DNA of 64,000 nucleotides, taken from positions 52,948,001 to 53,012,000 of the forward strand of contig NC_043009.1 in the NCBI RefSeq assembly GCF_006345805.1, written 5' to 3'. Numbering within the stretch: the stretch's first letter is position 1; the number at the start of each line of letters is the position of its first letter. This document shows positions 22,706 to 60,299 of this stretch, piece after piece. The DNA is from Octopus sinensis (lineage: Eukaryota). A program made the position numbers and the translations under genes. The notes under the pieces were generated by a model, which had not been told where the DNA came from, made no database searches, and was given only the letters and a program-made list of their open reading frames with translations.

Positions 22706-23752
<1,047 letters not shown>

Positions 23753-38039: not shown

Positions 38040-38238
38040 CTAGTTAGCAAAAAGTAAGATTAGAAACAACAGGGAAATGAAGGAGATATTTGGAAGTGGT
38101 TTTATACCGGATGAATCTTTAATGTTGATTGATCTACATTTGTCGGACATTATATCATAGTTGTGGACTTGAAATAATTTCGTAATCTTCTCTGGACACT
38201 TAAAGTCGGCCATGTTTTCAATTCCTTCTTTCAAAAGT
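38040..38238 (-). CDS. Paralog 1 terminal exon: LLKEGIENMADFKCPEK...DKCRS...ISFISLLFLILLFAN*
   Basis: Acceptor TTTTATCTTTTCAG; 1+66 codons (phase 2) matching the upstream donor; homologous exon at 49800-49992. Confidence 0.85.
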
Positions 38239-38637
38239 CTGAAAAGATAAAAATATCGTCTTAAAAGTTTCATTTTAAGTTCCACAAAAACAATGACAGC
38301 AATAGGTAATTAAGTACAATTTGATACCAGGGATGGAGCAATGGATATTTAATGTGTAAACTTTGATTACATATTTATAATGGGACTATATAGGTTTTAG
38401 TTTATTCTTCGGATCTCACTTCCGGTTGTTATTTCACAAAATATAATATATCACAACTGTGACATATCTTATGAGATATTCAAGAAAGGGAGTGGAATTT
38501 GTAAGAAAATACTGGTGTGAGACGTATTTTAAAACATTTTTGGTATATTAATGAAACGATTCTAATTTAGCAACATACAAATGTATTTTAATAAAAAAAT
38601 TGTGCGTATTTTCTCGGTAAGTTTTCTTATGAGATTT

Positions 38638-39140
38638 TTATGAATCGATTTTCAGCATCGATGATTGCTTCAATGCCGGACAGAAGTCCTTGAAATTGCT
38701 TGCACTAAATGGTTCCTATTGGTTTTGGATACCACCTGGACAATGACCGCTTTCAGTGAAGCTACGGTATTGCGATGATGTCGATTAGTCGCCTATTCAA
38801 TAATATTCTGTGATTAAATCTGACAAGTTTGGAGTGTACAAGTTCGGTGTTAGGTGATCGTAATGATATCCTGACATCCATTCTTGGGTTACGTGGGCTT
38901 TGTAAAATGCTGCCGAGTATTACTAAAACACGTATGGCATTCTGCTGCGTTACTTCATCCAGGTTTTAAAAACTGTCTCTAACACCTCAACGTATGCATC
39001 AACATTGGTTCTAATACTTTTGAGATAAAGACATGAACATTTATATTTGACATACTCCCGTGCACTAGACAAATGCAGCGAACGTTTTCCCACCTTCGAT
39101 GAGGAGTTTGTCAAATATAAATGCACGCCGCTCTTTCTTT
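38638..39140 (-). pseudogene. maT/DD37D-like transposase remnant in paralog 1 intron
   Basis: DAYVEVLETV, TQEWMS, NRHHRNTVASLKA and EAIIDAE-like C-terminal motifs. Confidence 0.65.
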
Positions 39141-39337
39141 TTTTGTGTGTGCATATTATACATCTGTCTGTCTGTGTAAACGCATATATTAATAGGCGTA
39201 CGAAGTTATCATTCGCAGCTACATCCATCGCATATTAGAATCTACCTCAAAGTGGATATTAATATTATAACTGGTGATGTAAAATCCTTTTCACAACTAG
39301 CGCATGTTAAAATTCTGTAGAAGAGGTTGTATATATA

Positions 39338-39731
39338 TATACATATAAAGCTGAAGTTGTCTGTGTGTGTGGTAGGTTTGGTAGCCTTCAACTAACACTA
39401 TCTATTCCGAGACCCTACAGCGCAAGTTGACCAAAATTGAGAACATGATAGAAGAAGGCTTGCTCTTCATTCTGTAGAAGAAAAAATTCAAATCGGACCA
39501 TGTTAAGACTAAAAATTATTTACATCAAACAGGTGCTTTTTTTCTATGAAAATCCCTAATTTTTACGATTTTTTGACTGCTGTGTCGCGATTTTTCAGTG
39601 TATTTCAATCAGAAAAATGTTCCCTTAAAAGAATAACAAGCTACATAATGCAAGATTTTTACTTACAAGATTCCAATTCTAAAGGGTCGAAAAGAAAACA
39701 AACCCGATCAACGCCGGGCTATACCGCTAGT
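39338..39731 (-). mobile_element. Helitron-like element (related family)
   Basis: Minus-strand ACTAGCGGTATAGCCCGGCGTTGATCGGG start. Confidence 0.6.
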
Positions 39732-39914
39732 ATATATATATTATAGCATATTACTGTTATCTATTATTATACCAACTGGGAGAGCTGGAAGTCAACCCCA
39801 ATGAGATCCGAAGTAAAGACGTTGAGTTTTGAATCTAATTGCATTAAAACTCTAACGTGTCTCTTAATCATCACTCGTGTATCATTAAATAATCGAAACA
39901 TTTTCGCTACATAC

Positions 39915-40086
39915 GGACAATATTTCTTGTAGTATTCTTCTCTTGTAATTTTATAATATCTCTGCTGCATAAATAAGTCTTTTCCTTTCTCGAAGAGCCG
40001 CTGAAATTTCTTTAATCCATTCATTGAGCTATTGAATACTGCAGTCGTTATCTTTTGTATGAAACATGGCATACCATCAAATACAG
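39915..40086 (-). CDS. Paralog 1 exon: VFDGMPCFIQK...REEYYKKYC
   Basis: TTTCAG acceptor, GTATGT donor, 172 nt (2+56 codons+2); same length as 52150-52321. Confidence 0.88.
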
Positions 40087-40379
40087 CTGAAATAGATTTA
40101 AGGAAAAAGTGCTATAGATTACCATTTTATTTATGATTTGTTTATGTATATGAATTTGTTTTATTCCGTGTGTGTGTGTGTGTGTGCACGCGCATATACG
40201 CGGTGAATATTTCGCAGGTGTAATAGAGAATATACAAGTTGAGATTCGCATGTAATGATGTTATAAAAACAAAAGGAAAAAGTTAAGAGGTGTAGTGTTT
40301 GTAACATCGACATTTACCACCCTGTCGGCAAAGTAATTGCTGTTTAGGATTGTATCTTGGGCGTAGGAGAACCGTATCG

Positions 40380-41270
40380 GTACACAGCCCTGATAAGCAC
40401 TGTTCTAAAAGAATATAGGAGCAAAAATTGACCACGAGAAAGCAGTAGGCCTGTAGTGTGGCCCCTCGACAGATTATCAGTTAAAATGCTGGGGGTTTTG
40501 GTCCAGAATTCTAGGTGGACAAAAACTAGGGCAAGGTCACGAGATATGGAGAGAAACATATCTCTGAAAAGCCGGGTGGAAGTGAAGAATCCTCACATCG
40601 CTTCCATCATACATTACATCCCGACCGTCGTGTCTTGTCCCGGTTTACGTCCAACCAAACTGGAGCGCATACTCTTCCGACTTCTTTGGAACGGATGCGT
40701 TCCACTGGTCAAGGCGCGCCATTTGCTGTCAATATACACTGAACGGAGGACTGGGCATGCCGTGGCTGCTGATGCGCAGACATGCGCTGAGGCTACGATT
40801 TCTTCAGTGCTTCTTTGACGGTGAGTAGGTGTGGTCGCCGTTTGTAAGACAGGATTATTCACAGCTCGTCTCTTTGACTGAGCTGCAGTCCTGGATCAAG
40901 TATACACCGAGGCAGAGCACCTGGCACCTAAAGTGTCGTTATCAGAGCACCTGGCACCTAAAGTGTCGTTATCAGAGCACCTGGCACCTAAAGTGTCGTT
41001 ATCAGAGCACCTGCACCTAAAGTGTCGGTTGTGACACCTAAAGTGTCATAATCGCCTGTCAGCCCGCCAATGCAGTCGGTAGAATTTCCACTCTGGTGTT
41101 ATGTAAGGCTCAGTAGCAGGAAAGTGTGATAACGTTCTCGGGGAGATTCTAGGTATCGACGAGAATGAGCTGAACGATCTGTTCTGGAGGACTTTCAGTT
41201 CGGAGCCTATGGATAGTTTCCAGAAATCGTTGACTGGGGTGGGGGTGGGGGGTCATTGCTTGCTCGGGAT
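40380..41270 (+). pseudogene. L1/Tx1-like LINE remnant
   Basis: KLERILFRLLWNG-VPLV followed by GLGMPWLLMRRHALRL in a shifted frame. Confidence 0.65.
40913..41030 (+). repeat. 30-bp tandem repeat, ~3.8 copies (CAGAGCACCTGGCACCTAAAGTGTCGTTAT)
   Basis: Direct inspection; no spacers. Confidence 0.95.
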
Positions 41271-41504
41271 AAACACTACAAGCATGGAAGGGTCTGCTCG
41301 ATGCTGGTGTGTTCACATCCCCTTAACTTAGCAGTTCGGCAAAAGTGACCGATAGAATAACTACTAAGCTTACACTCAAGGTGGTGCTCCAGCATGGCCG
41401 CATTGAAATGACTGAAACAAAGAAAAGGATATATGTGTGTGTGTTCATGTATGAATAACAAGAAATACTGCCCTACCTATATAATATTGACTCTCTCTCT
41501 CTTT

Positions 41505-41915
41505 ACTCTTTTACTTGTTTCGGTCATTTGACTGTAGCCATGCTGGAGCACCGCCTTTAGTCGAGCAAATCGACTCCAGGACTTATTTTTGTAAGCCTAG
41601 TACTTATTCTATCGGTCTCTTTTGCCGAACTGCTAAGTTACGGAGACGCAAACTCACCACCATCGGTTGTCAAGTGATGTTGGGGGGACAAACACAGACA
41701 CATAAACATACACACGCACAAACATATATATGTATACATATATTACATATATTTACGACGGGCTTCTTTCAGTTTCCGTCTATCAAATCCACTCACAAGG
41801 CCTTTGGTCGGCCCGGGGCTATAGTAGAAGACACTTGTCCAAGGTGCCATGCAGTGGGACTGAACCCGGAACCATGTTGTTCATAAGCAAGCTACTTACC
41901 ACACAGCCACTCCTA
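41505..41915 (-). mobile_element. SINE family A
   Basis: Match to the other copies. Confidence 0.9.
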
Positions 41916-42163
41916 CGACTGTTGAAAAAAAAAAAACAACCTTCGATTAGCGGTGAGTATTTAATTATGTTTGTAATTCGAAGGCAAAATCTCCTCACGA
42001 TTTGTGTTAGATATGAACAAAAATCAAAACAACTAGTGACGAAGATATATACTGACGGCCATGTTCTGTACGACAAGTGTTTGAGTGGACAGTTTCTAGT
42101 TTGTAATGCTCAACCAACAGTGACCAGAAGAAAGCATTAACAAGAAAAAAAACTTAAGCTTAC

Positions 42164-42309
42164 CTTCTCCGTTTTTACACAGTTTCTCGTTGGCCTCTTT
42201 CAAACGGAAGATATTTATCCCCAATATATTTAAGGTCGTCCTAACTTGATCACATTTTTTTAAATCATCGTAGCAAGAATAGAGTAGCTCATTGGGCTTT
42301 GATCCATCC
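42164..42309 (-). CDS. Paralog 1 exon: DGSKPNELLYSCYDDLKKCDQ...EKLCKNGE
   Basis: TTTCTTTTTCTAG acceptor, GTAAGC donor, 146 nt (1+48+1); homolog at 60151-60299. Confidence 0.88.
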
Positions 42310-42333
42310 CTAGAAAAAGAAACAAATAAACAC

Positions 42334-42336
<3 letters not shown>

Positions 42337-42396
<60 letters not shown>

Positions 42397-42510
42397 CATA
42401 CATACATGCATACATACATACATATATACATACATATATACATACATACATACATATATACCTACATACATACATATATACATACATACATACATACATA
42501 CATGCATGCA

Positions 42511-42544
<34 letters not shown>

Positions 42545-42558
42545 CATACATACATACA

Positions 42559-42592
<34 letters not shown>

Positions 42593-42677
42593 CATACATA
42601 CATACATACATATATACATACATACATACATATATACATACATACATACATACATACATACATACATACATACTACA

Positions 42678-42711
<34 letters not shown>

Positions 42712-42725
42712 CATACATATATACA

Positions 42726-42757
<32 letters not shown>

Positions 42758-42863
42758 CATACATACATATATACATACATACATACATACATACATGCAT
42801 ACATGCATGCATGCATACATACATACATACATACATGCATGCATACATATATACATACATACA

Positions 42864-42925
<62 letters not shown>

Positions 42926-44050
42926 CATACATACATACATATATACATACATACATATATACATACATACATATATACATACATACATACATACATACAT
43001 ACATACATACATACATACATACATACATACATACATACATACATACATACATGCATACATTATTATTATTATTATGGCTGTCCCCTCGCTATCGAGTATG
43101 GTCATTGCACGAAGCTTAACTGTTACTGGTGCTGTGATCGAATGTGACTTTTTAGCCCAGCTAAAGATCTACAATGTCTTGTACAAAATTGGCAACTAAA
43201 ACCTTTACTGGTAATAGCCGGCTGTAGTTGTAACAGGGCTTCATGTACATACATACATACATACATACATACATACATTATTATTATTATTATTATGGCT
43301 GTCCCCTCGCTATCGAGTATGGTCATTGCACGAAGCTTAACTGTTACTGGTGCTGTGATCGAATGTGACTTTTGAGCCCAGCTAAAGATCTACAATGTCT
43401 TGTACAAAATTGGCAACTAAGACCTTTACTGGCAATAGCCGGCTGTAGTTGTAACTGGGCTTCATGTACCTTTGCATGTCGTTTAAGTCCTCCTGCCGAA
43501 TTACACTCTCTTCCACATGCCCAACAGATATAATTAGTATGGTGTGTTACACCACCACCAGTGGCCAGGTTGTCACTCATCTGTCTCGTTTTATGACTAC
43601 GAAGATGACTCATGAGTCCAGCTTTACTGAGTCAGGGTCTTGCACAGACATTACATGTCAGAATCATAGGAAGACCCTTCCCTTCTGGAAGTGTAACAGC
43701 GATGCCCATACATACATACATACATACATGCATACATACATACATACATACATACATACATACATACATACATACATGCATACATGCATACATACATACA
43801 TACATACATACATACATGCATGCATACATACATACATACATACATGCATACATACATACATACATACATGCATGCATACATGCATACATACATACATACA
43901 TACATACATGCATACATACATGCATACATGCATACATACATACATACATGCATACATGCATACATACATACATACATACATGCATACATGCATACATGCA
44001 TACATACATACATGCATACATACATACATGAATACATGCATACATACATG
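42337..44050. repeat. (TACA)n/(CATG) microsatellite blocks
   Basis: Direct inspection; source of the HTYI/MYVC ORFs. Confidence 0.95.
43063..43700 (-). pseudogene. RTE-clade LINE 3' end with C2H2 zinc fingers; last ~180 bp tandemly duplicated
   Basis: CWACGRECNSAGGLKRHAKVH and [22 protein letters not shown]; ~43063-43243 repeats ~43279-43463. Confidence 0.75.
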
Positions 44051-44208
44051 CATATTGCATGTCTCTACATAGACACACAGACAGAGACACGTGCGCACGC
44101 ACGCACGCACACACACACACACACACACATACACACTCACACACACACACACACATTACAGTAGTATCGGTGCTCAACGGTGTTGAGGCACAAGCGAACT
44201 GTAGTGAT

Positions 44209-44292
44209 GCCATCTTGGAAATCTCCAGCACGCACGCGCAGGGCTGGAGTCTTCCGGGAGGCTTGCCGGAAGTTCCCTCATGCGCATGCGCA
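44209..44292. promoter_or_regulatory. GC-rich patch with YY1-, ETS- and NRF1-like motifs
   Basis: GCCATCTTG 44209-44217, CCGGAAGT 44266-44273, TGCGCATGCGCA 44281-44292. Confidence 0.4.
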
Positions 44293-45035
44293 GAAAACTA
44301 GCAGCAGCAAAATTCTCTGGTATCGCACTAACCCTAACCCTGACGCCAGCAGCTGAACAAGACAGACGTGTCTGCATCAGCTCTCTCGAGCTGCTACCTC
44401 GTGGCGCCTCTCTGCTATGCTTGGACGGGCAGGATTAACTCACTCCAATTTACTACAGCCGATAAGCTCCTAGGTTGCCCATTCGCCCAGAGGAAGGAAA
44501 TGTTTATATTGCGAATCAAGAAATAAATATTTATGCCGTTGAAGTTAATCGGAAGTCTTGACTCTTTCTTCGATTAATATTTAATGTAAAGGATGCGAGG
44601 TGAACCCATCCAATGCGGATATCTCTAATGCTGTTACAGAACTTTAGGTTAGTTAAAATATGCTTATGACATATTTCAACTTCTAAACGCAAATTCATAG
44701 CAGTTACCGTATAGAAAAAAAAATTCTCTCTTCTGGTAAAAAGGTGTAAAAACATCATATTTGTACAGTGCTGTCACCTGTTGCATTGTCACACATCGAT
44801 GTTTCTAACTCTTTCGCAGTATCAACCGGAAGTACCAAAGACAGACATCTCTGGACATATATATACATATATATATATATACATATATATACATATATAT
44901 ACATATATATATATATACATATATATATATACATATATACATACATATATATATACATACATATATATATACATACATATATATATACATATATATATAT
45001 GTGTACATACATATATATGTACATACATATATATA

Positions 45036-45067
<32 letters not shown>

Positions 45068-45145
45068 CATACATATATATATACATACATATATATAACA
45101 TATATATATATACATACATATATATATAACATATATATATATACA

Positions 45146-45185
<40 letters not shown>

Positions 45186-45196
45186 ACATATATATA

Positions 45197-45237
<41 letters not shown>

Positions 45238-45248
45238 ATATATATACA

Positions 45249-45280
<32 letters not shown>

Positions 45281-45564
45281 ATATATACATACATACATAT
45301 ATATATATGTATGTATATGTGTGTGTGTGAGAGAGGATGATGTTTGTATATGTTTATGTTTGTAATCAAAAATTTCCGATTTAAGTAAAAAAAAAACCAC
45401 TAAATTATCAGTTTGAAGACCGCCTTCAAGTGAAAAACTCTGACCAGAATCATCTTTTGTAAATATCTAATTATCACAGTGAAAAAAATTATCAGAAAAT
45501 CCATTTCTCATCATTTTATCACACATACAATATTATACCAAAGCCTTTCTATCTCCTATTCTAC

Positions 45565-45596
<32 letters not shown>

Positions 45597-45644
45597 TGTA
45601 TGTATGTATGTATGTATGTATGTATGTATGTATGTATGTATGTT

Positions 45645-46005
45645 TTGTCTTAAGGCTGTATCATGCGCGGGGACATAGAAATAATCGGACTGAATACCCG
45701 ATCGCACAGTTAAACCATTGGGAGTGAAGGACTCCTAGCCTTTGTTAGGGCATCCTTCTTCGAGAAGGTAACTCAGGTAACTGGGATAACTCCGACATAA
45801 AACCTGCGGCTCAGTGGTTACCGATGATGTTGACTTGTTCTTCTTTTCGGATTATGGCTGCTGTTGTTTAGTAAGTGGGATTGACTCAGTGCACAGCCTT
45901 TCCTCACTTTAAAAACATCTTCTTGCACAGGCATTGCACGTTAACAACGTTGATGAAGCTTCGTGCAATGGCCATACTCGATTACGAGGGGGCAGCCACC
46001 ACCAT
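45645..46005 (+). mobile_element. Non-coding retroposon sharing its 3' tail with the RTE at 43063, followed by (TATG)n
   Basis: GCTTCGTGCAATGGCCATACTCGAT...GGGGGCAGCC matches the RTE end. Confidence 0.65.
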
Positions 46006-46789
46006 GTATGTATGTATGTATGTATGTATGTATGTATGTATGTATGTATGTATGTATGTATGTATGTATGTATGTATGTATGTGTGTGTGTATGTATGTA
46101 TGTATGTATGTATGTATGTGTGTGTGAGTATGTATGTATGTATGCGTGTATGCATGTATGTATGTATGAATGTATGAATGTATGTATGTATGTATGTATG
46201 TATGTATGTATGTATGCATGTATGTATGTATGTATGTATGTATGCATGCATGCATGTATGTATGCATGCATGTATGCATGTATGCATGCATGTATGTATG
46301 TATGTATCTATGTATGTATGCGTGTATGCATGTATGTATGCATGCATGTATGCATGTATGTATGTATGTATCTATGTATGTATGCGTGTATGTATGTATG
46401 TATGTATGTGTGCATGCATGTGTGCATGCATGTATGTATGTATGTATGCGTGTATGCATGCATGTATGTATGTAAATTTATGTGTCCGTGTTTCACATAA
46501 TTTTCTTGTTAGTTTTATGCATATATGATGTATATATGTACCAAGCGGTGTTGCCCTAACCACAAGGCCAGCTATTTCTGGCCTTACATCAACGTAAGTG
46601 CTCAGCTGCTACATAATTTATAGAAAGGATGAAAACTAAAGTGGTTCTCGGCAGAATTTGAACTCAGAACGTAAAAACGGATGAAATGCCGCAATGTATT
46701 TTCTCCGGCAACCCAACGATTCTGGTAGCACCCTCGAAATTGCTGGCCTTGCGCAAACATTTGAAACAAACATGTAGGTTATCATGTTT

Positions 46790-46868
46790 GGGCAGATGGC
46801 GTAGTGGTTAAGGGCACGGGCTACTAACCCCAAGATACCGAGTTCGATTCCAGGCAATGACCTGAATA
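46790..46868 (+). mobile_element. tRNA-like SINE head (family D) followed by (AAT)n
   Basis: TGGCGTAGTGGTTAAG A-box and GAGTTCGATTCC B-box; related copies at ~19020-19195 (-) and ~20003-20070. Confidence 0.75.
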
Positions 46869-46916
46869 ATGATAATAATAATAATAATAATAATGATAAT
46901 AATAATAATAATAATA

Positions 46917-46963
<47 letters not shown>

Positions 46964-47518: not shown

Positions 47519-47584
<66 letters not shown>

Positions 47585-47766: not shown

Positions 47767-47908
47767 TTGCACATCAATTCCGTCTGACTTCTTGGGATAC
47801 GATTACCGTTCAATGAGTTCAAATTTAATTTCGATATACATTTCTGAAATTCACCGATAGCCTTCTCCATACAACCGTCACCCAATGATATCCACTGGAA
47901 AATACTAT
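47767..47908 (-). CDS. Paralog 1 exon: SIFQWISLGDGCMEKAIGEFQKC...QTELMC
   Basis: ATTTTATATTTCAG acceptor, GTAATT donor, 142 nt (2+46+2); phase fits the next exon (AA+G = Lys). Confidence 0.78.
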
Positions 47909-47993
47909 CTGAAATATAAAATGTATAAGCAGATCTTTACAGTAAGCAACAGGTCTTTAAAGAATTAGCTACAAGTATTTATGCGCCTAGTTA

Positions 47994-48516
47994 CCGTAAA
48001 TCCTCGAGTATTGTCCGCCCTTGAGTATAATACGCAGGGGGATTTTTAGGGGGCTATACCTCTGAAAAGCCTAAACCTTATGTATAATACGCACCCCTTC
48101 TCTAGCTTGAGTCGTGCGTAATTATGCCAGTGGCACCTAGTCGAACAAACACTTCCGCGCATGCGTAATACAATAATGGTGATGTTCTTAACTGTTATAT
48201 GGGAATGTAAATATGTTTGCAAATTGTTTTTGTTACATGTTATTCTGTGTTCTGAATACTTTAATTTTAATAAATGTTGCTTACTGTAAGTTATGGATGA
48301 TTCTTTTATGACTTCATTACTTTCAGGCTTAGCTTAAGGTATTTTCGTGCCCGACATCACAAAATGCGTCTGAATAAACATTGCCGGACAGCAAATAGAG
48401 ACTCGAACATTGCTTAGAAAATATATTTCTTTTTTAACCTCGTATATAGTACGCACTAGGAATTTTGACCTTTAAATTTTGGGAAAAAAATGCGGATTAT
48501 ACTTGAGGATTTACGG
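47994..48516. mobile_element. Tc1/mariner-pogo-type MITE
   Basis: TIR CCGTAAATCCTC(G/A)AGTAT; TA on both flanks. Confidence 0.8.
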
Positions 48517-48749
48517 TATATAATGTCTGTCTTTTTTTAGTGTTCTTGTGCGTGAATATGTGCTGACAACAATTCTCTGTTTTTAAAATCTTAGCATTTA
48601 CTCAAAATTGCTACATTATGTTCAAGTGGTAGTGTTTGCAATAACATGTGTTACTAGACCTCCGGGTTGATCAATAAGTTCTAAGTATAGATTGTTGATT
48701 TGAAAAGCAGAAAAATGAGCAGCCAGGGATTGTAAATACAAATACTCAC

Positions 48750-48757
48750 CTCCACAT
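48750..48757 (-). CDS. Candidate micro first coding exon of paralog 1 (ATG TGG AG|GTGAGT)
   Basis: Consensus donor. The phase fits only if the TAG 4 nt into the next exon is the acceptor. Confidence 0.25.
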
Positions 48758-49276
48758 ATTTATATATTAGAGTGAACAAGCAATTTTAAAGATATGATAT
48801 TTAACGGTTTTCTGGGGGTTCGTAGACTGCGTGGAGATGAGTGGTAGGGTTATCAACGATTGAGTCAATTAACGCAGATGTACTCCAACGTGAATTCGGC
48901 TTACAGGGTTTTTAAAGGAATCCTGGCGACATTCTTAACCAATTAACCATTAAATAGAACAAACATGGCTCAAACTTCCACTGCTCCAATTGCCTCACGA
49001 AATGGTTTCGTTATGCTCGAGTCACTTTGTGAACACCCCACAGAATTCCTCTAAAGTGAAGGAAGCCAGGACTCTTGACATAGCCTTCTTCACCTTCAAA
49101 ATAATTACCTCTAAGGTTTTCGTTCAGCTTGGAGAATAACCAAAAGTCAGAGGAAGCAAAGCCTAAAATGTAGGAAGGACGAGGGAAATTTTGTTGCCCA
49201 ACTCTGTCATGTAGTTGGTTACCAGGATGTTCATCACAGAGTGGCCTGGGAACAAACTTTGCATAAATTTTGTGCA

Positions 49277-49705
49277 GGTGTGGCTATGTGGTAAGTAGCT
49301 TGCTTACCAACCACATGGTTCGGGGTTCAGTCCCACTGCGTGTCACTTTGGGCAAGTGTCTTCTACTATAGCCTTGGGTCGACCAAAGCTTTGTGAGTGG
49401 ATTTGGTAGACGGAAACTGAAGGAAGCCCGTCGTATATATGTATGTGTATATATGTATGTGTATATATATATATATATATGTATGTATGTGTGTGTGTAT
49501 ATGGTTGTGTGTCTCTGTTTGTCCCCCCACCATCGCTTGACAACCGATGGTGGTGTGTTTGCGTCACCGTAATTTAGCGGTTCGGCAAAAGAGACCGATA
49601 GAATAAGCACTAGGCTTACAAAAATAAGCCCTGGAGTTGATTTGCTCGACTAAAAGCGGTGCTCCACCATGGCCGCAGTCAAATGACTGAAACAAGTAAT
49701 AGAGT
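49277..49705 (+). mobile_element. SINE family A
   Basis: Match to the other copies. Confidence 0.9.
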
Positions 49706-49799
49706 GTATAGTTTCTGATGATTTAGGCACGAAGCTAGTAACTTTTTGGAGATGAGGTTAATCGATGCGTAGGTCAATTTTTTTTTTAGCAAATAACTT

Positions 49800-49992
49800 T
49801 TAACTAATAGCAAAAATTATTAAACAAGGAAATGAGGGAGATATTTTGAAGTGATTTTTACCAACTGAACCAATATTGTTGATAGATCTACATTTGTCAG
49901 ACATGATATAATAGGTGTTGTTCTGCATTATTTTAATAAACTTTTCTGGACACTTAAAGTCGGTCAGTTTTTCAATTCCATTTTTCAAAATT
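49800..49992 (-). CDS. Paralog 2 terminal exon: ILKNGIEKLTDFKCPEK...DKCRS...FPCLIIFAIS*
   Basis: TTTTTATATTTTTCAG acceptor, 1+64 codons, homologous to 38040-38238. Confidence 0.85.
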
Positions 49993-51700: not shown

Positions 51701-52149
51701 GTAACAAATATAATTTCAGTCGTCTACACTCTCGTCGGAACTTCTGTTCCTATATATAAAATGCAGAAAATGCATTTAATCTTTATTTATAGGAAGGTAA
51801 ATTCCGATTGGGGAATGAATGATATAAGAGATTTTGTTACTGAAGACGAGCAATTGCATTGAAACATACGTCGTACGTCAGAATCTACCACTGCGGGGAT
51901 AATTATATTATAATCGATAATGTACATTCCTTTTCAAAAATAACACACAAAAACGTTGAGGAAGAGGGTGTATACAGTATTGCATATTGCTGTTATTTAT
52001 TACACCGACCAAGGGAGATGGAAGTTAACTCAAGTGAGATCGGAACCAAGGACCTTGAGCCATGAATATAATTACATTAAAACTCTACCGTGTCTACTAA
52101 TCATTACTCAAGTATCATTAAATAATAAAAACAAATTTTCTCTACATAC

Positions 52150-52321
52150 GGACAATATTTCTTGAAGTACTCTTCTCTTGAAATTTTATATAGTCCCTGC
52201 TGCATGAATAAGTGTCTCCCTTTCTCGAAGAGCAACTGAAATTCCTTTAATTCATTCGTTGGTCTATTGTTTAATAGATTCATCATATTTTCTAAGAAAC
52301 ATGGCATATTCTCAAGTATAA
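52150..52321 (-). CDS. Paralog 2 exon: ILENMPCFLEN...REEYFKKYC
   Basis: TTTCAG acceptor, GTATGT donor, 172 nt; 31/56 identical residues to paralog 1. Confidence 0.88.
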
Positions 52322-52420
52322 CTGAAACAGATTGACGATAGGTACTGTAAATTAACGTTTTCTTTAGGGTTTCTTTAAATCTTGAGTCAGTATATAAGTG
52401 TATTTGTGTGTGTGTGTGTG

Positions 52421-52458
<38 letters not shown>

Positions 52459-53323
52459 ATGGAATATGAATTAGAGATAAAACCACTATTATGCAACTCA
52501 AACAGTGATAGACATAAGCCAATACATAAATAACAAATAATATTCATTCCTAGAGGGTATTGGAATATCCTTCAAAGATGAATTCCAAAATAACGGTTCC
52601 ATCTTACCTGTAAGTTCCATATCATACAAAATTGAGATTAAATACACTCAATAAATGTAAGCTATCAATATAATAATAACGGTTCCATCTTACCTGTAAG
52701 TTCCATATCATACGAAATTGAGATTAAATACACTCAATAAATGTAAGCTATCAATATAATAATAATTATAATAATAATATTAGGGAGTATAACTCTAAAC
52801 TTACAGGGAAAAATTCAATTTAGTATAAAATCAAATTTCACAGTATAAATATATAAAATATGAATTAGAGATAAAACCACTATTATGCAACTCAAACAGT
52901 GATAGACATAAACCAATATATATATATATATACGAGCAAAACGAACCCCCCCCCCCCGTCCAATGGACGGTTCTGAGTTGTCAAACATTTAAACCAAATT
53001 TTCTCAAAACAACTTGTCCGACCGTCCCATTTTGTGGCATTATTTCAAGCCAGCCGGCTTTTTTTGCGCAAGCTGCACGTGCATTTTCCTCGCGTACGCG
53101 TAGTATACATCGCAACAGCTGATGTACTTGCACGTAGAAATGCACGTTCCCACGGCTTTATCGATCGTATTCTCACCTGGAATCGATTTTTGTAATTTTT
53201 TCAAGACTTATACACGCCCTGATACCGTCGGTATCTACATATCAAATTTGAGCGCAACTGGATGGAGGATGCCGAGATCCTAGAAGACACACAGACAGAC
53301 AGACAGAACGGATTTTATATAAT

Positions 53324-53856
53324 ACTAGCAGTATCGCCCGGCGTTGCTCGGGTTTGTAAGGGAAATAACTATATAAGCATTTTTAGAGAATTATAGCAAA
53401 AAATGCATTAAAAATGGAATAAAAAATGATGATAATTTTTTTTTAAAATCGTTGACTCAGTGTCTTCAAGCCATGAAGTCGTTGTTCTAAAAGAACGCTG
53501 GTCTCCTTGACAACGCATTACGGCGTTGATTTCCTTACACTCCCTTCCCCACAGCTTCACGAGGGAGGGAAGAAGGGGGAGAAGCAAACAGGTGCAGGTG
53601 TGACCGTGGACGCCAACTCCGCCGCCATCGACACACGAAAAATTGTGCATTAAAATGGAATAAAAAATGATGTTAAATTATTTTAAAAATCGTAGACTCA
53701 TCGTAGACGCGCGCTAATAGACAGACGGGCTCGATATAAATCATGACTATAAGATACCCGAATTTGGTTAAACTGCACCGCAAAATGTGGGAGTAGTTAG
53801 GAATCTAAATCGAAGGGGACAGACACTCACACAACTACAGTTTTATATATATAGAT
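53324..53856 (+). mobile_element. Helitron-like element with an internal extra segment
   Basis: Same ends as 28326-28721. Confidence 0.65.
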
Positions 53857-53869
53857 ATATATATATATA

Positions 53870-54285
53870 TATTTCTTTATTACCCACAAGGGGCTAAACG
53901 TAGAGGAGACAAACAAGGACAGACAAAGGTATTAAGTCGATTTCATCGACCCCAGTGCGTAACTGGTACTTAATTTATCGACCCCGAAAGGATGAAAGGC
54001 AAAGTCGACCTCGGCGGAATTTGAACTCAGAACGTAACGGCAGACGAAATACCTATTTCTGTTTCTTTACTAACCACAAGGGGCTAAACACAGAGGACAA
54101 ACAAGGACAGACAAACGGATTAAGTCGATTTCATCGACCCCAGTGCGTAACTGGTACTTAATTTATCGACCCAGAAAGGATGAAAGGCAAAGTCGACCTC
54201 GGCAGAATTTGAAATCAGAACGTAACGGCAGAGGAAATATGGCTACGCATTTCGCCCGGCGTGCTAACGTTTCTGCCAGCTCGCC
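53870..54285 (-). mobile_element. Head-to-tail dimer of SINE family B
   Basis: Same architecture as 26865-27285. Confidence 0.85.
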
Positions 54286-54530
54286 ATATATATATACATC
54301 TACATGTATATATACATGCATATATAAATAATTATACGTGAGTACAGGACACCACAACAAGACGTAGAAACGGGAAAAACAAAAAAGCAAAAGAAAACGA
54401 GAAAAAAAAAACAGTTACAGGACGTGCTACACAAGGAAAAAACCCCCGTCATCAGCTGTCGCTAGTAGACTCAAGCATGTTTCGAAGGCAAGACAGAACA
54501 CACACACAACACACACACCACACCACACCA

Positions 54531-54574
<44 letters not shown>

Positions 54575-54623
54575 TATATATATATATATATAATATATAT
54601 ATATATATTTATTATATAGAAGG

Positions 54624-54674
54624 AGCTTCTACAGGACTAGAACTGTTTCATTCAAGAGAAATCTTCAGGAAGCT
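54624..54674 (-). ncRNA. Type I hammerhead ribozyme motif
   Basis: AGCTTC-CTGAAGA-T TTC TCTT GAA T-GAAA-CAG..CTG-TA-GAAGCT. Confidence 0.7.
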
Positions 54675-54877
54675 AGTTAACAAGAATTGTATTGGCATTT
54701 ATACATTTAGGCAGGTTTTATGGGGTGGTGGTGGGGGACTTTTTGGGGGTAGGCATAGCGCAAAAAATCATACTTGGAGGAGTGGTCAAGGAGTCAGTGG
54801 TAAATTAGATATGTGTATATGTGTATGTATGTGTGTGTGTATATATGTATATGTATGTATGTATATGTATGTATGTG

Positions 54878-54929
<52 letters not shown>

Positions 54930-55104
54930 ATGTATATGTGTATGTGTATGTATTTGTATGTGTATGCATGCGCGTATATGTATGTATATGTATACGTGTG
55001 GGTGTGTGTATGTGTGTATATATGTATGTATGTATGGGTGTATGTATGTATGCGGATATGTGTATATATGTATATATATATATGTATATATATGTATATA
55101 TGTG

Positions 55105-55135
<31 letters not shown>

Positions 55136-55685
55136 GTGTGTATGTGTATATGTGTATGTATATGTATATGTGTGTATATATATGTATGTATGTATTTGTA
55201 TGTAGGTGTATATGTATGTGTGTATATATATTTGGTGTATATGTATAGACTAGTCTTCTAAGATTGTAGACATGAATCTGTAGGTACGCGTACGTATGTG
55301 TATATACGTGTATGTATGTAGATGTATGTATGTATGAATATAACGCGTGCGTGCGTGTATGTGTATGAGTGTACGAATGAGAGTGTGTGTGCGTGCTAAT
55401 GAGTGTGCGTGCGTGAGTGAGTGCTTGTGCTCAAGTAGAAAGATAAAAGGGACTAGCCAAGATGTTTGTGACCAGCGGTCAAAGATAACAAAAGTAATAA
55501 ATGAAGATAATCAAATTAAAATTAGGGAATGGGTTTGTAATTGTATGTATATATGTGTGTATGTGTAGGTATGAATAGGTACACATATGTATGTATGTGT
55601 GTGTATATATGTGTATATATGTGTGTGTGTGTGTATGCATACATATATGTGTGTGAATAGGTACACATATGTATGTATATATATA

Positions 55686-55736
<51 letters not shown>

Positions 55737-55941
55737 ATACATACATATATGCGTATATGTATATATGAGTATATAGGGACTTGTGTGTTGTGTGTGCATG
55801 TGTGTATGTGGATATGTGTGTGTATGTGTGTATGTGTATGTGTGTGTATGTATAATTTTTTTGTGTGTATGTGTATGTGTGGTCGTGTGTGTGTATATAT
55901 ACATGTGTGTGTGTATATGTATATGCATGTATACGTGTATG

Positions 55942-55995
<54 letters not shown>

Positions 55996-56320
55996 GATAT
56001 ATGTATGCATATGTGTGTGTGTATATGTATATATATATATATGGGTGTGTGTGTATGTATGTGTGTATGTATATGTGTGTGTGTTGAGAATTTCCTTATT
56101 TACCTAAAACTCTATTCTTCTATATATTTTTGTATTTTATTCTTTTTTTATTCTTTTTTTTTTATTCTTTTATTTATTCTTCTATCTAATTTACCACTGA
56201 CTCCTTGACCACTCCTCCAAGTATGATTTTTTTGCGCTATGCCTACCCCCAAAAAGTCCCCCACCACCACCCCTATAAACCTGCCTAAATGTATAAATGC
56301 CAATACAATTCTTGTTAACT

Positions 56321-56371
56321 AGCTTCCTGAAGATTTCTCTTGAATGAAACAGTTCTAGTCCTGTAGAAGCT
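56321..56371 (+). ncRNA. Type I hammerhead ribozyme motif (GUA cleavage after 56365)
   Basis: Intact CUGAAGA/GAAA core, 6-bp stem I, 3-bp stem II with U.U, 4-bp stem III with CUAG in the loop. Confidence 0.7.
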
Positions 56372-56769
56372 CCTTCTATATAATAAATTAATTTTACTCT
56401 GCTATGTATTGAGTACCTTATTTACTGTGGTTAACCCCGAATCAACCCGGGACCTACATATATATATATATATATATATAATATATATACATATACGTAT
56501 ATATATATATATATATATGTAAGTGTGTGTGGTGTATTTGTGTGTGTGTGTGTGTGTGTGTATCGACTATTTCGTAGGTGTTATGGAATATGTTCTAGTT
56601 CAGATTAGGAAGAATCGCTGTTATAATCGCACAGCCAGAGGAAATCTCAGAGTAGATAGTCAACCAGTGAGATAATTAAAACGTGGCACTCCGTCTGTTA
56701 CGACGTCGAGGTTCCAGTTGATCCGCTCAACAGAACAAACGGTAGTCTGAAGAAGCAAGGTCGGAGAGA

Positions 56770-57600
56770 ATAAGGTGGATGAGGAATTTGTTCCTAAGCA
56801 AACTCTTCGATCTTCTATGATGTGATCTTTGCAGTGTTGGGTCGCGCAATGTCCTGATGAAACATCACTCCTTTTCGATTCACTAAAGCGAGTCTTTTTT
56901 TCTTCAAAGCTTGGTTCAAGCGCTCTAATTGCTGACAGTAGACCTGAGCATTGATTGTTGCATTAGGTGGTAACAATTCAAACTGAATTACTCCTTTGCA
57001 ATCCCACCAGATAGAGAGAAGAACCTTTTCCCCATGAAGTTCCCTTCTCGGTTGTGGTTGAGCTTTTCCCCTTTACCAAGCCACTGTTTACAACGTTTAA
57101 CATTTCGATTGAAGATCCATTTTTCATCACCAGTCACAAGTCTATCCAAAAAGGGTAAAATGAATTCGCGATACTAGGGATTTGCAGTTACTTTCGGACA
57201 GTTCATTAGGCATCCATTTTCCAAGTTTAGGAACCTTTCCAAGTTGTTGAAGATGACGTCGAACAGTTGTATGGCTTGAACAAAGCTTTATTTCCAATTC
57301 TTCAACTGATAATGCAGGATTTTCTTCAAGTAATGCCTCAAGGAGCTTATCATCAAACTCAACTGGACGTTCTGTTCGATCTTCATCTTCGAGGCTGAAA
57401 TCTCCACTTCTGAATTTTGCAAACCATCTTCTGAAAGTTCTTTCATTCAAGCATTCTTTCCCATAAACTGAGTGTATGTTTCGAATCGCTTCGGCTGCAG
57501 AGTTTAATTTTTTGTACTCATAAAGCATTATGTGCCTCAAATGCTCTTTGGATACTTGGATGTTAGAAAGTGTTTTAATCAAAGAAATTTTATTTCTATT
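56770..57600 (-). pseudogene. mariner (DD34D) transposase remnant
   Basis: WFAKFRSGDFSLEDE, GKW-P-EL, TGDEKW, WWD, FHQD-ARP motifs. Confidence 0.92.
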
Positions 57601-57644
57601 ATTCTGTAAAATAATATTTAATCAGTTTAAGTGTACACATAAAG

Positions 57645-57796
57645 CACAGGAGTGGCTGTGTGGCAAGTAGCTTGCTATCAACCACGCTAGCCTGGTTCTG
57701 GTTCATCCCACTGCGTGGCATCTTGGGCAAGTGTCTTCTGCTATAGCCCCGGGCCGACAAATGCCTTGTGAATAGATTTGGTAGACGGAAACCTGT

Positions 57797-57847
<51 letters not shown>

Positions 57848-57861
57848 TAGATATATTGTGT

Positions 57862-57895
<34 letters not shown>

Positions 57896-58095
57896 TGTGT
57901 TGTCCCCCTAGCATTGCTTGACAACCGATGCTGGTGTGTTTACGTCCCCGTCACTTAGCGGTTCGTCAAAGAGACCGATAGAATAAGTACTGGGCTTACA
58001 AAGAATAAGTCCCGTGGTCGATTTGCTTGACTAAAGGCGGTGCTCCAGCATGGTCGCAGTCAAATGAGTGAAACAAGTAAAAGAGAGAGTAAAGA
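57645..58095 (+). mobile_element. SINE family A
   Basis: Match to the other copies. Confidence 0.9.
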
Positions 58096-58832
58096 GTATA
58101 TGCATAAAAATAATTCTAAATTCCATTAGACATTCTAAAATGCTATTAAATTTGATTCAATTTAAAAAAAAAAGGTAAAATCGGATAGAACTTATGAGAC
58201 GACCTGATATTACATAAGATAAATATACAAACTCGGGGTTAAAGGATATCGTCTACGGTCGTTTCAGTGTATAAATGGCGTTTTAAGTATTGAATTTTTA
58301 TCTCAATATTTGTCCCTCTCTATTCGGTATGCGAACCCAACGTACATGATGCATAGTTTTTGCATATAACTTTATATATATATATATATATTATATATAT
58401 ATATATATATAATGACTCTTTTAACTCAAGAGGGGCAAATATACCACCAAACCCCCACCTTGTGATAAAAAATGTTAGCTCTGCTATGCCAGTGAGGAAT
58501 ATATCACCCGTACCATTAGCAGCTGCTCCAAAATGTCTGTGAGATAATGCTTGCTTCTGAGGCACGATATAGTTGCAATGAATATTTATAATGCTATCCA
58601 CAGGAAGAACTGCCATGATGTATACATCAAAGGCATGTCAGAACCAGCTAGAATTCACACTTTTAAAAACAAGGAATACTGGTGGAATGAGCCAATAAAA
58701 ACATGAGTTCCGTGCTGTAAACATGACAAACCTGATATTGTAGCGTGAGACAGGGAACGGAAGTCATGCACTGTTGTAGAAGTCAACAGCCCAGCAGATG
58801 TGAATGTACAATTAAAAGTCCAGGAGAAAGAG

Positions 58833-59105
58833 AACAATTGCAGCGTGGAAGGTGTTTGTAAGCCATTTAAGAAACACACAAAAGCCGTTCGATTCGCTTC
58901 AACATTTAAGTTTAATTTGTCAAAATATTTTCGTCGCTTTAAGACCGCGACCTGTTCACTGACAAAAATCCGTGCTCAGTGAACAGGTCGCGGTCTTAAA
59001 GCGACGAAAATATTTTGACAAATTAAACTTAAATGTTGAAGCGAATCGAACGGCTTTTGTGTGTTTCTTAAATGGCTTACAAACATCTTCTACGCTGCAA
59101 TTGTT
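58833..59105. repeat. Near-perfect hairpin: 130-bp arms, 13-nt loop
   Basis: 58833-58962 vs 58976-59105, 2 mismatches. Confidence 0.95.
58916..58966 (-). ncRNA. Hammerhead-like motif with G3-C8 swapped core (GUGAACA)
   Basis: TTTGTCA/TGACAAA stem I, GTCGC/GCGAC stem II, GAAA, palindromic AATATT stem III. Confidence 0.55.
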
Positions 59106-59506
59106 TTCGTTTCAGCACACGATCTCAGATCAAATCACTCGCTATGCAAGTACATCTCCGTAATTCAGAAAGAGAACATTTATGGGGAACTTGCCGCACT
59201 TATGCCATAACTATGCATCCTCATTTATCCTTATCAACATTAGGTTATTTACCAACAAATTTGCACAAAAATCTAAAAAATACTCGGTTTCACGGAAAAG
59301 GAACAAAAGAAACTGACGCAGATTCTCCAAATCTGATCTATTAATGACACAGTGAAGATCTGTAAGACATTTCAAAAATTTTCTATCTGAGATTCTTAAG
59401 TGAATAGATGCAGACTCTTGGGTGTATGCATCGACACTTAAACCGGCACACCAGCTCAACCATACATTTACAAACATCAGGAACTCTTTTAACTCAAAAA
59501 GTCATG

Positions 59507-59684
59507 CCACTTTGTTAGCGGCCAGCTTGGACTTAAATTAAACTCTAAGAAAAATAAACATGCATACTTACATACATGCACACACGCATACATACATACA
59601 TACATACATACATACATACATACATACATACATACATACATACATACATACATACATACATACATAGACACACACACACATATA

Positions 59685-59720
<36 letters not shown>

Positions 59721-59814
59721 TGTATGTATGTATGCATGTGTGCATGTATGTAGGTATGCATGTATATTTTTCTTAGAGTTTAATTTAAGTCCAAGCTGGC
59801 CGCTAACAAAGTGG
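59507..59814. repeat. Fold-back inverted duplication centred on a (TACA)n/(TATG)n switch
   Basis: ~90-bp arms with 3 mismatches plus mirrored microsatellite. Confidence 0.9.
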
Positions 59815-60150
59815 TACACACACACACACACACATATATATGTATGCATGTATGTATGTATGTATATATGTATGTGGGTGTGTATGTGTGTATAAAAGTA
59901 AACATAATGTGTTTTGTATGTAATATTAGCTGTTTAAAAATCCTTCGGTTAACATGGAGTTTTTAATTATATTTTTAATTAAAAGAGAAAATCCCCCTCG
60001 TAATTGTGTTAGATGAAGAAAATGACAATCAAAACGATCAGTAACTTATATATATCTTGACGGTCAAGCTTTGAACGAGAGCTGTGAGACTGGAAAGCTG
60101 CAAGTTTATATTATTTCACCAAAAATGACCAGAAGAAAACTAAATCTTAC

Positions 60151-60299
60151 CGTCTTCGTATTGACACAGCCTCTCGAAGCCCTCCATCCAACGTGAGATT
60201 TCAAATCCAAGAATACCCATGGTCGTGCTAAATTGTTCACAGTTTTTAAAATGGTGAAAGCAAGAAGTGAGTAACTCTTTGTGTTTTGATTTTCCGATC
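60151..60299 (-). CDS. Paralog 2 exon: IGKSKHKELLTSCFHHFKNCEQF...ERLCQYED
   Basis: ATTTCTTTTTCTAG acceptor, GTAAGA donor, 149 nt (1+49+1); three Cys align with 42164-42309. Confidence 0.88.

What the first reader, a model, noticed from the sequence alone, without database searches (positions are those of the whole stretch)
38040..60299. Tandem pair of an unannotated Cys-rich, probably GPI-anchored protein family hidden in repeats
Seen: seven exons with canonical splice sites join in phase. Paralog 1 (47767-47908, 42164-42309, 39915-40086, 38040-38238) gives ~218 aa with 10 Cys. Paralog 2 (60151-60299, 52150-52321, 49800-49992) gives 170 aa and keeps all 7 shared Cys and all intron phases. Both end in small residues (DSSG / GSVG), a spacer and a hydrophobic tail. 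None appears as a recognisable ORF in the track. Inference: a lineage-expanded cell-surface or secreted family (recognition, sensory or immune). The Cys spacing loosely recalls DUF19/DUF1397-type helical disulfide domains, but that is not established.
Basis: partly seen in the sequence, partly recalled or inferred. Interest (0 to 1): 0.75.

Follow-up and report, generated by a model that had tools for sequence, protein, structure and literature searches.

The report
One three-domain octopus surface-protein gene
The two supposed hidden paralogous genes are the second and third repeats of one Octopus sinensis gene that is already annotated but uncharacterised. It encodes a fast-evolving, cysteine-rich, probably GPI-anchored surface protein found almost only in octopods.

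Summary
The seven exons are real. They sit on the minus strand, have canonical AG/GT sites, and join in frame.

They are not two genes. When the third exon is ended at an internal donor (G|GTAAAA, exon 49862-49992), the seven exons translate exactly to residues 165-533 of RefSeq XP_029644460.1. This is LOC115218675 of Octopus sinensis, and the window is CM016871.1:52948001-53012000.

The gene encodes a signal peptide, then three tandem ~185-aa domains with 10 cysteines each, then one GPI-type tail. "Paralog 2" is domain 2. Its apparent tail is a frameshifted intronic relic. "Paralog 1" is domain 3 and carries the only intact tail.

The duplicated unit never contained exon 1. The same domain junctions are annotated in O. 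vulgaris and O. bimaculoides.

The family forms a small gene cluster in octopods. Argonauta has relatives, and the bivalve Solemya gives one faint match. No member reaches a Pfam threshold; DUF19 scores 10.7 bits against a cut-off of 23.2. A confident AlphaFold model (pLDDT 85, ten helices) has no PDB analogue.

Orthologues evolve at dN/dS of about 1.2, yet every aligned cysteine is kept. Function is unknown; a surface recognition or binding role is inferred. The result is real and modestly interesting, but the gene is already annotated.

The parts
60151..60299 (-). The preceding exon 2 of domain 2 lies outside the window, at about window-equivalent 71411-71575.
   Evidence: AG/GT sites and reading frame. 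100% match to XP_029644460.1. Exon 2 is located in L004 at 16433-16597.
52150..52321 (-). Domain 2, exon 4.
49862..49992 (-). Domain 2, exon 5, used as an internal exon. It ends in phase 1 at the donor G|GTAAAA (GT at 49861-49860).
   Evidence: Sequence read directly. With this boundary the seven exons translate exactly to residues 165-533 of XP_029644460.1.
49800..49861 (-). Decayed relic of a GPI-attachment signal plus its stop codon, now the start of the inter-domain intron. It carries a 1-bp deletion and further deletions relative to domain 3.
   Evidence: DNA alignment of all exon-5 tails. Read-through translations. Hydrophobicity 1.87 against 3.12. Frame-shifted tblastn match.
47909..49861 (-). 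Inter-domain intron. It consists of the exon-5 tail and about 100-140 nt of former 3' flank, then repeat insertions, then about 700 nt derived from the 3' end of intron 1. It holds no exon-1 homologue.
   Evidence: blastn among paralogous and orthologous segments. Start-codon and donor scan. Exon-1 DNA and peptide searches.
47767..47908 (-). Domain 3, exon 2. It encodes a 12-aa linker (DSIFQWISLGDG), a degenerate remnant of the signal-peptide C-terminal half, and the first three Cys.
42164..42309 (-). Domain 3, exon 3.
39915..40086 (-). Domain 3, exon 4.
38040..38238 (-). Domain 3, exon 5, the terminal coding exon. It carries the last two Cys. The intact GPI-type signal SSG-IKPLPNIS-FISLLFLILLFAN is at 38043-38114 and the stop codon at 38040-38042.

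Best explanation
The window holds the 3' two-thirds of a single gene, Octopus sinensis LOC115218675.

Product: an N-terminal signal peptide (encoded upstream of the window), three tandem ~185-aa all-helical domains, short linkers that are degenerate remnants of the signal peptide, and one C-terminal GPI-attachment signal encoded only by the last exon. Each domain has 10 invariant cysteines, presumably forming five disulfides.

Origin: a single-domain ancestor of the type still present next door (LOC106869697-like) underwent tandem duplication of the block 'end of intron 1 - exons 2-5 - short 3' flank'. Every copy carries a latent 5' splice site at the omega-site glycine codon (G|GTA), in phase 1. 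This is the same phase as the exon-2 acceptor, so the copies splice into one open reading frame. The GPI tails of the internal copies became intronic and decayed.

Shown: the exon structure, identity to the RefSeq protein, tail decay, the duplication boundaries, rapid evolution with conserved Cys, and the absence of Pfam or PDB relatives.

Inferred: the mature protein sits on the outer face of the plasma membrane by a GPI anchor. It acts as a rapidly diversifying binding or recognition scaffold (immune, gamete or chemosensory) whose ligand is unknown.
For: 1. Exact translation match. Seven exons with the 49862 boundary equal residues 165-533 of XP_029644460.1. The window is 100% identical to CM016871.1.
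2. The same junctions (…SIN..SS|V/D…G-C) are annotated in O. vulgaris (CAI9731999.1, 600 aa: signal peptide plus three domains) and in O. bimaculoides LOC106869700.
3. Read-through tails of the internal domains D1 and D2 are frameshifted or truncated in both species. The D1 lesion is shared by both. Terminal D3 and the single-domain genes keep 12-15-residue apolar tails.
4. There is no exon 1 or start codon between the units, and the duplicated unit demonstrably excludes exon 1.
5. D2 and D3 nevertheless keep open frames, splice sites and all 10 Cys across species. Orthologous D2 domains are 74% identical.
6. dN/dS is 1.2 over 441 codons, with 22 of 22 aligned Cys columns conserved. Exons are 86% identical against about 89% for orthologous introns.
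7. The AlphaFold model of D3 has pLDDT 85, pTM 0.79 and ten helices.
8. Relative LOC115218299 has a Ser/Thr-rich repeat stalk before the same kind of tail, typical of surface display.
Against: - No transcript evidence could be consulted. The fused models are computational annotations, and such pipelines sometimes chain tandem paralogues.
- The O. sinensis RefSeq model is 5'-truncated. Domain 1 exons 1-2 were not found within 9.9 kb upstream, so the signal peptide is seen only in the orthologues.
- dN/dS of about 1.2 is not significantly different from 1 (Fisher p=0.36). Taken alone it would also fit relaxed constraint.
- GPI anchoring rests on rule-based inspection only. No predictor or experiment was available.
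- The functional role is pure inference.
Confidence: 0.78

Rival explanations
1. One reading: two independent, tandemly arranged paralogous genes, each making its own roughly 200-aa GPI-anchored protein. On this view the fused database models are read-through annotation artefacts.
For: - Each unit has the full exon 2-5 set of the single-domain relatives, with the same phases.
- Paralog 2's exon 5 reads through to a stop codon.
- Annotation pipelines do sometimes fuse tandem duplicates.
Against: - There is no start codon or exon 1 for paralog 1 in the 1.9 kb between the units, and no homology to exon 1.
- The duplication unit lacks exon 1.
- Paralog 2's tail is frameshifted and poorly hydrophobic, and the same kind of decay is seen in D1 and D2 of O. 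bimaculoides.
- The signal-peptide remnants have lost hydrophobic residues (VTISPLIPSING, DSIFQWISLGDG against VVTIFLWITLSNG).
- Three annotations in three species use the same junction.
Confidence: 0.08
2. One gene with several products. Besides the three-domain anchored form, use of the read-through stop or polyadenylation after domain 1 or 2, or in-frame skipping of whole exon sets, yields shorter secreted or chimeric isoforms. All repeat units share intron phases, so such skipping stays in frame.
For: - O. bimaculoides isoform X2 (431 aa) joins D2 exons 2-4 directly to D3 exon 5.
- Read-through frames of D1 and D2 end in stop codons soon after the donor.
- All phases are identical between units.
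Against: - The O. bimaculoides locus has assembly gaps exactly where D3 exon 4 should be (41030-42204 in L005). X1 and X2 may therefore be modelling artefacts.
- There are no transcript data.
Confidence: 0.25
3. A decaying, functionless locus: a pseudogene or a gene drifting neutrally.
For: - dN/dS is about 1.2 and not distinguishable from 1.
- The RefSeq model in O. sinensis lacks its 5' end.
Against: - Open frames and all splice sites are intact in three species.
- 22 of 22 aligned Cys are conserved although about 28% of residues differ. At roughly 0.7 identity per site, the chance expectation is about 4e-4.
- The terminal GPI tail is conserved while the internal tails decayed. This shows selection discriminating between otherwise equivalent sequences.
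Confidence: 0.04
4. A divergent molluscan member of the nematode DUF19 (PF01579) secreted Cys-rich domain family.
For: - UniRef auto-names the multi-domain O. vulgaris and O. bimaculoides orthologues 'DUF19 domain-containing protein'.
- DUF19 is the only Pfam family hit by more than one of the 13 domains (2 of 13, best E=0.075).
- An oyster protein carries the same automatic name.
Against: - The best score is 10.7 bits against the 23.2-bit gathering cut-off.
- The three-domain proteins give no DUF19 hit at E<=1 with the 2025 Pfam release.
- The match covers only the first seven Cys.
Confidence: 0.3

Closest known systems
RefSeq LOC115218675 (XP_029644460.1, O. sinensis) and its orthologues CAI9731999.1 (O. 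vulgaris) and LOC106869700 (O. bimaculoides)
   Same: It is this gene. Residues 165-533 are encoded exactly by the seven exons.
   Different: None for the sequence. The database entries carry no function. The O. sinensis model lacks its 5' end. The O. vulgaris model ends in a doubtful micro-intron that removes the last Cys and the tail.
Single-domain neighbours LOC106869697 / LOC106869698 / LOC106869701 (O. bimaculoides) and LOC115218647 / LOC115218299 (O. sinensis)
   Same: The same 10-Cys domain, the same five-exon structure and phases, a signal peptide and a hydrophobic C-terminal tail. They lie on the same chromosome; LOC106869698, LOC106869697 and LOC106869700 are adjacent on the same strand in O. 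bimaculoides, and the position of LOC106869701 within the cluster was not mapped.
   Different: They have one domain per gene and are 18-55% identical to the domains here.
Pfam DUF19 (PF01579), nematode secreted Cys-rich domain
   Same: Extracellular, Cys-rich, often in several copies per protein, with unknown function. There is weak sequence similarity over the first seven Cys.
   Different: The match is below threshold (10.7 against 23.2 bits). The domain here has 10 Cys in about 185 aa. From my memory of the Pfam entry, not checked here, DUF19 has about 12 Cys in roughly 130-157 aa.
Ly6/uPAR superfamily (analogy of architecture only; from general knowledge)
   Same: Clustered genes for small disulfide-rich GPI-anchored single-domain proteins. 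One member (uPAR) has three tandem copies of the domain and a single GPI anchor, made by internal duplication.
   Different: The fold is unrelated: a three-finger beta fold against ten helices here. There is no sequence or structural similarity.
Helical disulfide-rich extracellular domains with solved structures (OSTM1 luminal domain; GFR-alpha/GAS1 from memory)
   Same: All-helical, several disulfides, glycosylated, membrane-tethered.
   Different: Foldseek finds no significant match. OSTM1 (9g6c_D) gives E=1.1 and TM 0.25, and nothing reaches E<0.8.

Membership tests
LOC115218675 gene product (octopod 10-Cys helical domain family) | Encoded peptide identical to the RefSeq protein | tested here: met
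   Residues 165-533 are identical. The window is 100% identical to the chromosome record.
LOC115218675 gene product (octopod 10-Cys helical domain family) | Ten conserved Cys per domain, with shared exon boundaries and phases | tested here: met
   Nine Cys columns are invariant and the tenth is at least 90% conserved across 13 domains, including Argonauta and Solemya. Exon structure is shared with L001.
Pfam DUF19 (PF01579) | HMM score at or above the gathering threshold (23.2 bits) | tested here: not met
   The best score is 10.7 bits (E=0.48) for domain 3. Two of 13 domains give any hit, best E=0.075. There is no hit for the three-domain proteins.
Pfam DUF19 (PF01579) | Profile-profile or structural similarity to bona fide nematode members | not testable with these tools
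   No DUF19 sequences or predicted-structure library were available. UniRef's automatic name is the only positive hint.
Pfam DUF1397 | Any HMM match | tested here: not met
   No hit even at E<=10.
GPI-anchored proteins | N-terminal cleavable signal peptide | tested here: inconclusive
   The signal peptide is not encoded in the window. The orthologues start MNRVLPQYIFVVTIFLWITLSNG|C, which has a classic n/h/c layout and obeys the -3,-1 rule by inspection. No predictor was run, and the O. sinensis 5' exons were not found.
GPI-anchored proteins | C-terminal signal: small omega to omega+2 residues, a polar spacer of about 8 residues, a 12-20-residue hydrophobic end, and no cytosolic residues | tested here: met
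   SSG - IKPLPNIS - FISLLFLILLFAN*. The Kyte-Doolittle mean is 3.12 and the apolar run is 14. This is a rule-based check only.
GPI-anchored proteins | Release by PI-PLC, or anchor detected chemically | not testable with these tools
   This needs an experiment.
Solved helical disulfide-rich ectodomains (OSTM1, GFR-alpha and others) | Significant structural match | tested here: not met
Foldseek against the PDB with the pLDDT-85 model gave a best E of 0.83 and no TM-score normalised by the query length above 0.30.

The most novel reading that the evidence does not exclude
The ~185-aa ten-helix, five-disulfide domain is a fold with no solved or curated relative. It would define an octopod-centred family, with a faint bivalve relative, of GPI-anchored surface proteins under diversifying selection. 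These would be recognition molecules for immunity, gametes or chemotactile sensing. The three-domain gene would show a neat route to domain concatenation: a latent splice donor built into the GPI omega-site codons lets a tandem duplicate splice in frame at once.
Probability: 0.3. Interest if true: 0.55.

Novelty: new member of a known kind. Interest (0 to 1): 0.33.

Why it matters
The result corrects the finding. There is no hidden gene pair. The window holds part of a gene that is already annotated but entirely uncharacterised.

What remains of interest is modest but real.
- A lineage-restricted, clustered family of probable GPI-anchored proteins, with a confidently predicted helical disulfide-rich domain that matches nothing in Pfam or the PDB.
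- Evolution at dN/dS of about 1 or higher with strictly conserved cysteines. This pattern is typical of recognition molecules, so the genes are candidates for octopus-specific surface biology.
- A clear, sequence-documented example of a multi-domain protein built by tandem duplication. A pre-existing cryptic donor at the GPI omega site was used, and the redundant anchor signals then decayed.

Tried and rejected
1. Exon 1 for paralog 1. An ATG plus phase-1 donor scan of 47909-49799 gave three candidates with no resemblance to the family's exon 1. One of them lies in an O. sinensis-specific insertion. DNA and peptide searches with the O. bimaculoides exon 1 found nothing.

2. An artefact of my own. 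In one search I thought every exon of the neighbouring B-type gene was duplicated and interleaved. The FASTA file held two loci (L002 and L003) and I had not printed the subject id. One search shows a plain single-set gene in each species, so the idea was discarded.

3. Pfam on single and fused proteins gave nothing above threshold.

4. PDB sequence searches with a single protein and with a profile gave nothing.

5. Foldseek against the PDB with two models gave nothing.

6. Literature. No paper mentions any of the LOC identifiers. 'DUF19 + octopus' returned only prefix matches such as DUF1943 and DUF1986.

7. Further family members in window 1-38000: none.

8. A dN/dS slip. One search had an off-by-one error in the D3 exon-5 pairing, and crashed on a zero dS. 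One search has the corrected figures.
Full report
**Observation**

Each is preceded by AG, and each non-terminal one is followed by GT. Joined, they give exactly the 218-aa and 170-aa peptides described, with 10 and 7 (+1) cysteines. The two peptides are 54% identical over 148 residues, E=7e-56. tblastn finds no further copies anywhere in the window.

One detail fails. The C-terminal 'tail' of paralog 2 matches the tail of paralog 1 only in a different reading frame.

**Identity of the locus**

A first homology search found only uncharacterised Octopus proteins of 220-233 aa. These have a signal peptide (MDGILPRYIFVVTIFLWIPLSNG|C…) and a tail (…SSGIKSLPNISLISLLFLILLFVIS) that matches paralog 1's frame. 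Their genes have five coding exons.

A profile search of 1.84 billion representative proteins then returned a 533-aa protein, P0006. It contains paralog 2 and paralog 1 at 100% identity, fused in one frame (…SINNIGSV|DSIFQWISLGDGCMEK…). P0006 is XP_029644460.1, LOC115218675 of Octopus sinensis.

The window is 100% identical to CM016871.1 and corresponds to 52948001-53012000.

The O. vulgaris orthologue (CAI9731999.1, 600 aa) shows the full architecture: signal peptide, three domains, C-terminus. O. bimaculoides LOC106869700 has the same domain junctions.

Upstream of the window lie domain 1 exons 3-5 and domain 2 exon 2 (L004 9917-16597). Domain 1 exons 1-2 were not found within the 9.9 kb available. 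This explains why the RefSeq model starts at an internal Met.

**One gene or two?**

No transcript data were available, so I looked for sequence evidence independent of the annotations.

- **(i) Tail decay.** Read-through translation of every exon 5 shows intact apolar tails in the terminal domain 3 and in the single-domain genes (Kyte-Doolittle 2.5-3.5, runs of 12-15). The tails of domains 1 and 2 are frameshifted or truncated in both O. sinensis and O. bimaculoides (1.5-1.9, runs of 7-8). The domain 1 lesion is identical in the two species.
- **(ii) No first exon.** No ATG-bearing exon lies in the 1.9 kb between the units.
- **(iii) Duplication boundaries.** The inter-domain introns are composed of the exon-5 tail plus about 100-140 nt of former 3' flank, joined to about 700 nt of the 3' end of intron 1. 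The duplicated block therefore never contained exon 1 or a promoter.
- **(iv) Signal-peptide remnants.** The half of the signal peptide encoded by exon 2 has lost hydrophobic residues in domains 2 and 3 (VTISPLIPSING, DSIFQWISLGDG against VVTIFLWITLSNG).
- **(v) Conservation of the internal units.** Domains 2 and 3 keep open frames, splice sites and all ten Cys between species. This makes sense only if they are expressed as part of the larger transcript.

All copies, including terminal ones, carry G|GTA at the omega-site glycine codon in phase 1, the phase of the exon-2 acceptor. A tandem duplicate could therefore splice in frame immediately. That step is inference.

**The protein**

Each domain is about 185 aa with ten aligned Cys. 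Nine columns are invariant and one is at least 90% conserved across 13 domains from Octopus, Argonauta and the bivalve Solemya.

AlphaFold2 with the 13-sequence alignment gives a ten-helix model with pLDDT 85 and pTM 0.79. A first model made with 7 sequences reached pLDDT 70.6.

Foldseek against the PDB finds nothing. The best E is 0.83 and no TM-score normalised by the query length exceeds 0.30; the helical disulfide-rich OSTM1 ectodomain appears at E=1.1, TM 0.25. Sequence searches of the PDB are empty.

No Pfam family reaches threshold. DUF19 is the only one hit by more than one domain (2 of 13, best 10.7 bits against a 23.2 cut-off). The three-domain proteins give no DUF19 hit with the 2025 Pfam release, although UniRef auto-names them 'DUF19 domain-containing protein'. 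DUF1397 gives nothing.

The C-terminus of domain 3 (SSG, an 8-residue spacer, 13 apolar residues, then stop) fits the rules for a GPI-attachment signal. A relative, LOC115218299, has a Ser/Thr-rich repeat stalk before the same kind of tail.

**Family and evolution**

In O. bimaculoides a B-type gene (LOC106869698), an A-type gene (LOC106869697) and the three-domain gene (LOC106869700) lie in a row on the same strand, and a further relative, LOC106869701, is on the same chromosome but was not mapped. O. sinensis has the same order for the three mapped genes.

Across 1.84 billion representatives only ten proteins reach E<=0.001. All are octopod except one Solemya protein (E=3.5e-4) and one apparent false positive.

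Domains 1-3 are about 50% identical to one another, and orthologous domains are 66-74% identical. The triplication is therefore much older than the O. sinensis / O. bimaculoides split.

Between these two species, over 441 codons:
- dS = 0.131, dN = 0.157, dN/dS = 1.2. This is not significantly above 1 (Fisher p=0.36).
- Exon identity is 86%, below the roughly 89% of orthologous introns.
- All 22 aligned Cys columns are conserved.

The B-type gene pair behaves alike, with dN/dS 1.22 and 10 of 10 Cys conserved. Constraint on the scaffold combined with rapid change elsewhere suggests diversifying selection on a binding surface. Site models on more species are needed to prove it.

**Function and literature**

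Nothing is published on these loci. [quoted passage not shown]

My best reading is a GPI-anchored, glycosylated, three-domain surface protein acting as a rapidly evolving recognition or binding module. The ligand and the tissue of expression are unknown.

**Verdict**

The exons are real, but the interpretation needs correcting. They are domains 2 and 3 of one already annotated, uncharacterised gene, not an unannotated pair of genes, and only the last unit has a working anchor signal.

The family is a lineage-restricted member of a familiar kind: clustered, disulfide-rich, GPI-anchored surface proteins, with an architecture analogous to Ly6/uPAR. Its domain has no recognised fold relative. Interest is moderate to low.

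Noticed in passing
window 32234-35034 (ORFs 32325-32957 + and 33122-34741 +): A GC-rich (51-58%) fragment of an LTR-type retrotransposon pol region. It has an aspartyl protease, DUF7047 with an RNase H-like RVT_3 domain, and an integrase core. It sits in the otherwise AT-rich region downstream of the gene.
   Followed up: partly
window 3698-4285 (+): A 195-aa ORF that looks by eye like the C-terminal part of a LINE-type reverse transcriptase. Pfam gave no hit at E<=0.001.
   Followed up: partly
window 8385-8720, 17897-18260, 22423-22775, 24755-25107, 41544-41920, 49274-49666, 57629-58047 and others: A roughly 370-bp interspersed (SINE-like) repeat present in at least 10 copies. The copies are 77-91% identical to copies in the O. 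bimaculoides loci (for example L001 33387-33756). One copy sits in the inter-domain intron.
   Followed up: no
window 26866-27236 and 53872-54239: Two tandem dimers of a 184-188-bp unit of one repeat family. The same unit is found at L001 19140-19372 and 23916-24149.
   Followed up: no
window 42335-43060, 43707-44054, 44857-45318, 46004-46474, 9559-10978, 54810-55246: Very long (TACA)n, (ATGT)n and (TATG)n microsatellite arrays of up to 182 copies fill the introns.
   Followed up: no
window about 47993-48516: A roughly 520-bp insertion in the inter-domain intron that is absent from the orthologous O. bimaculoides intron. One of the candidate 'start exons' for paralog 1 lies inside it.
   Followed up: partly
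window 38009-38035 and 38133-38237: The O. vulgaris model CAI9731999.1 ends …SDKSKRNLNDLFND. It uses a tiny intron that removes the tenth Cys, the GPI signal and the stop codon. This is probably an annotation artefact, or a minor non-anchored isoform.
   Followed up: no
L004 1-9916 (upstream of the window): Domain 1 exons 1-2 (signal peptide) of the O. sinensis gene are not within 9.9 kb upstream of domain 1 exon 3. In O. bimaculoides that intron is 3.4 kb. The RefSeq protein therefore starts at an internal Met.
   Followed up: partly
L001 13556-14124 vs L005 21506-22076 (O. bimaculoides): The end of intron 1 plus exon 2 of the single-domain A gene and of domain 1 of the three-domain gene are 85% identical over 583 nt. 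This is nearly the orthologue level (89%) and far above the other paralogous comparisons (about 70%). It suggests gene conversion at the 5' end.
   Followed up: no
P0016 (LOC115218299, O. sinensis; not in the window): This family member carries a mucin-like run of TVDSGSS repeats between the Cys domain and the hydrophobic tail.
   Followed up: no
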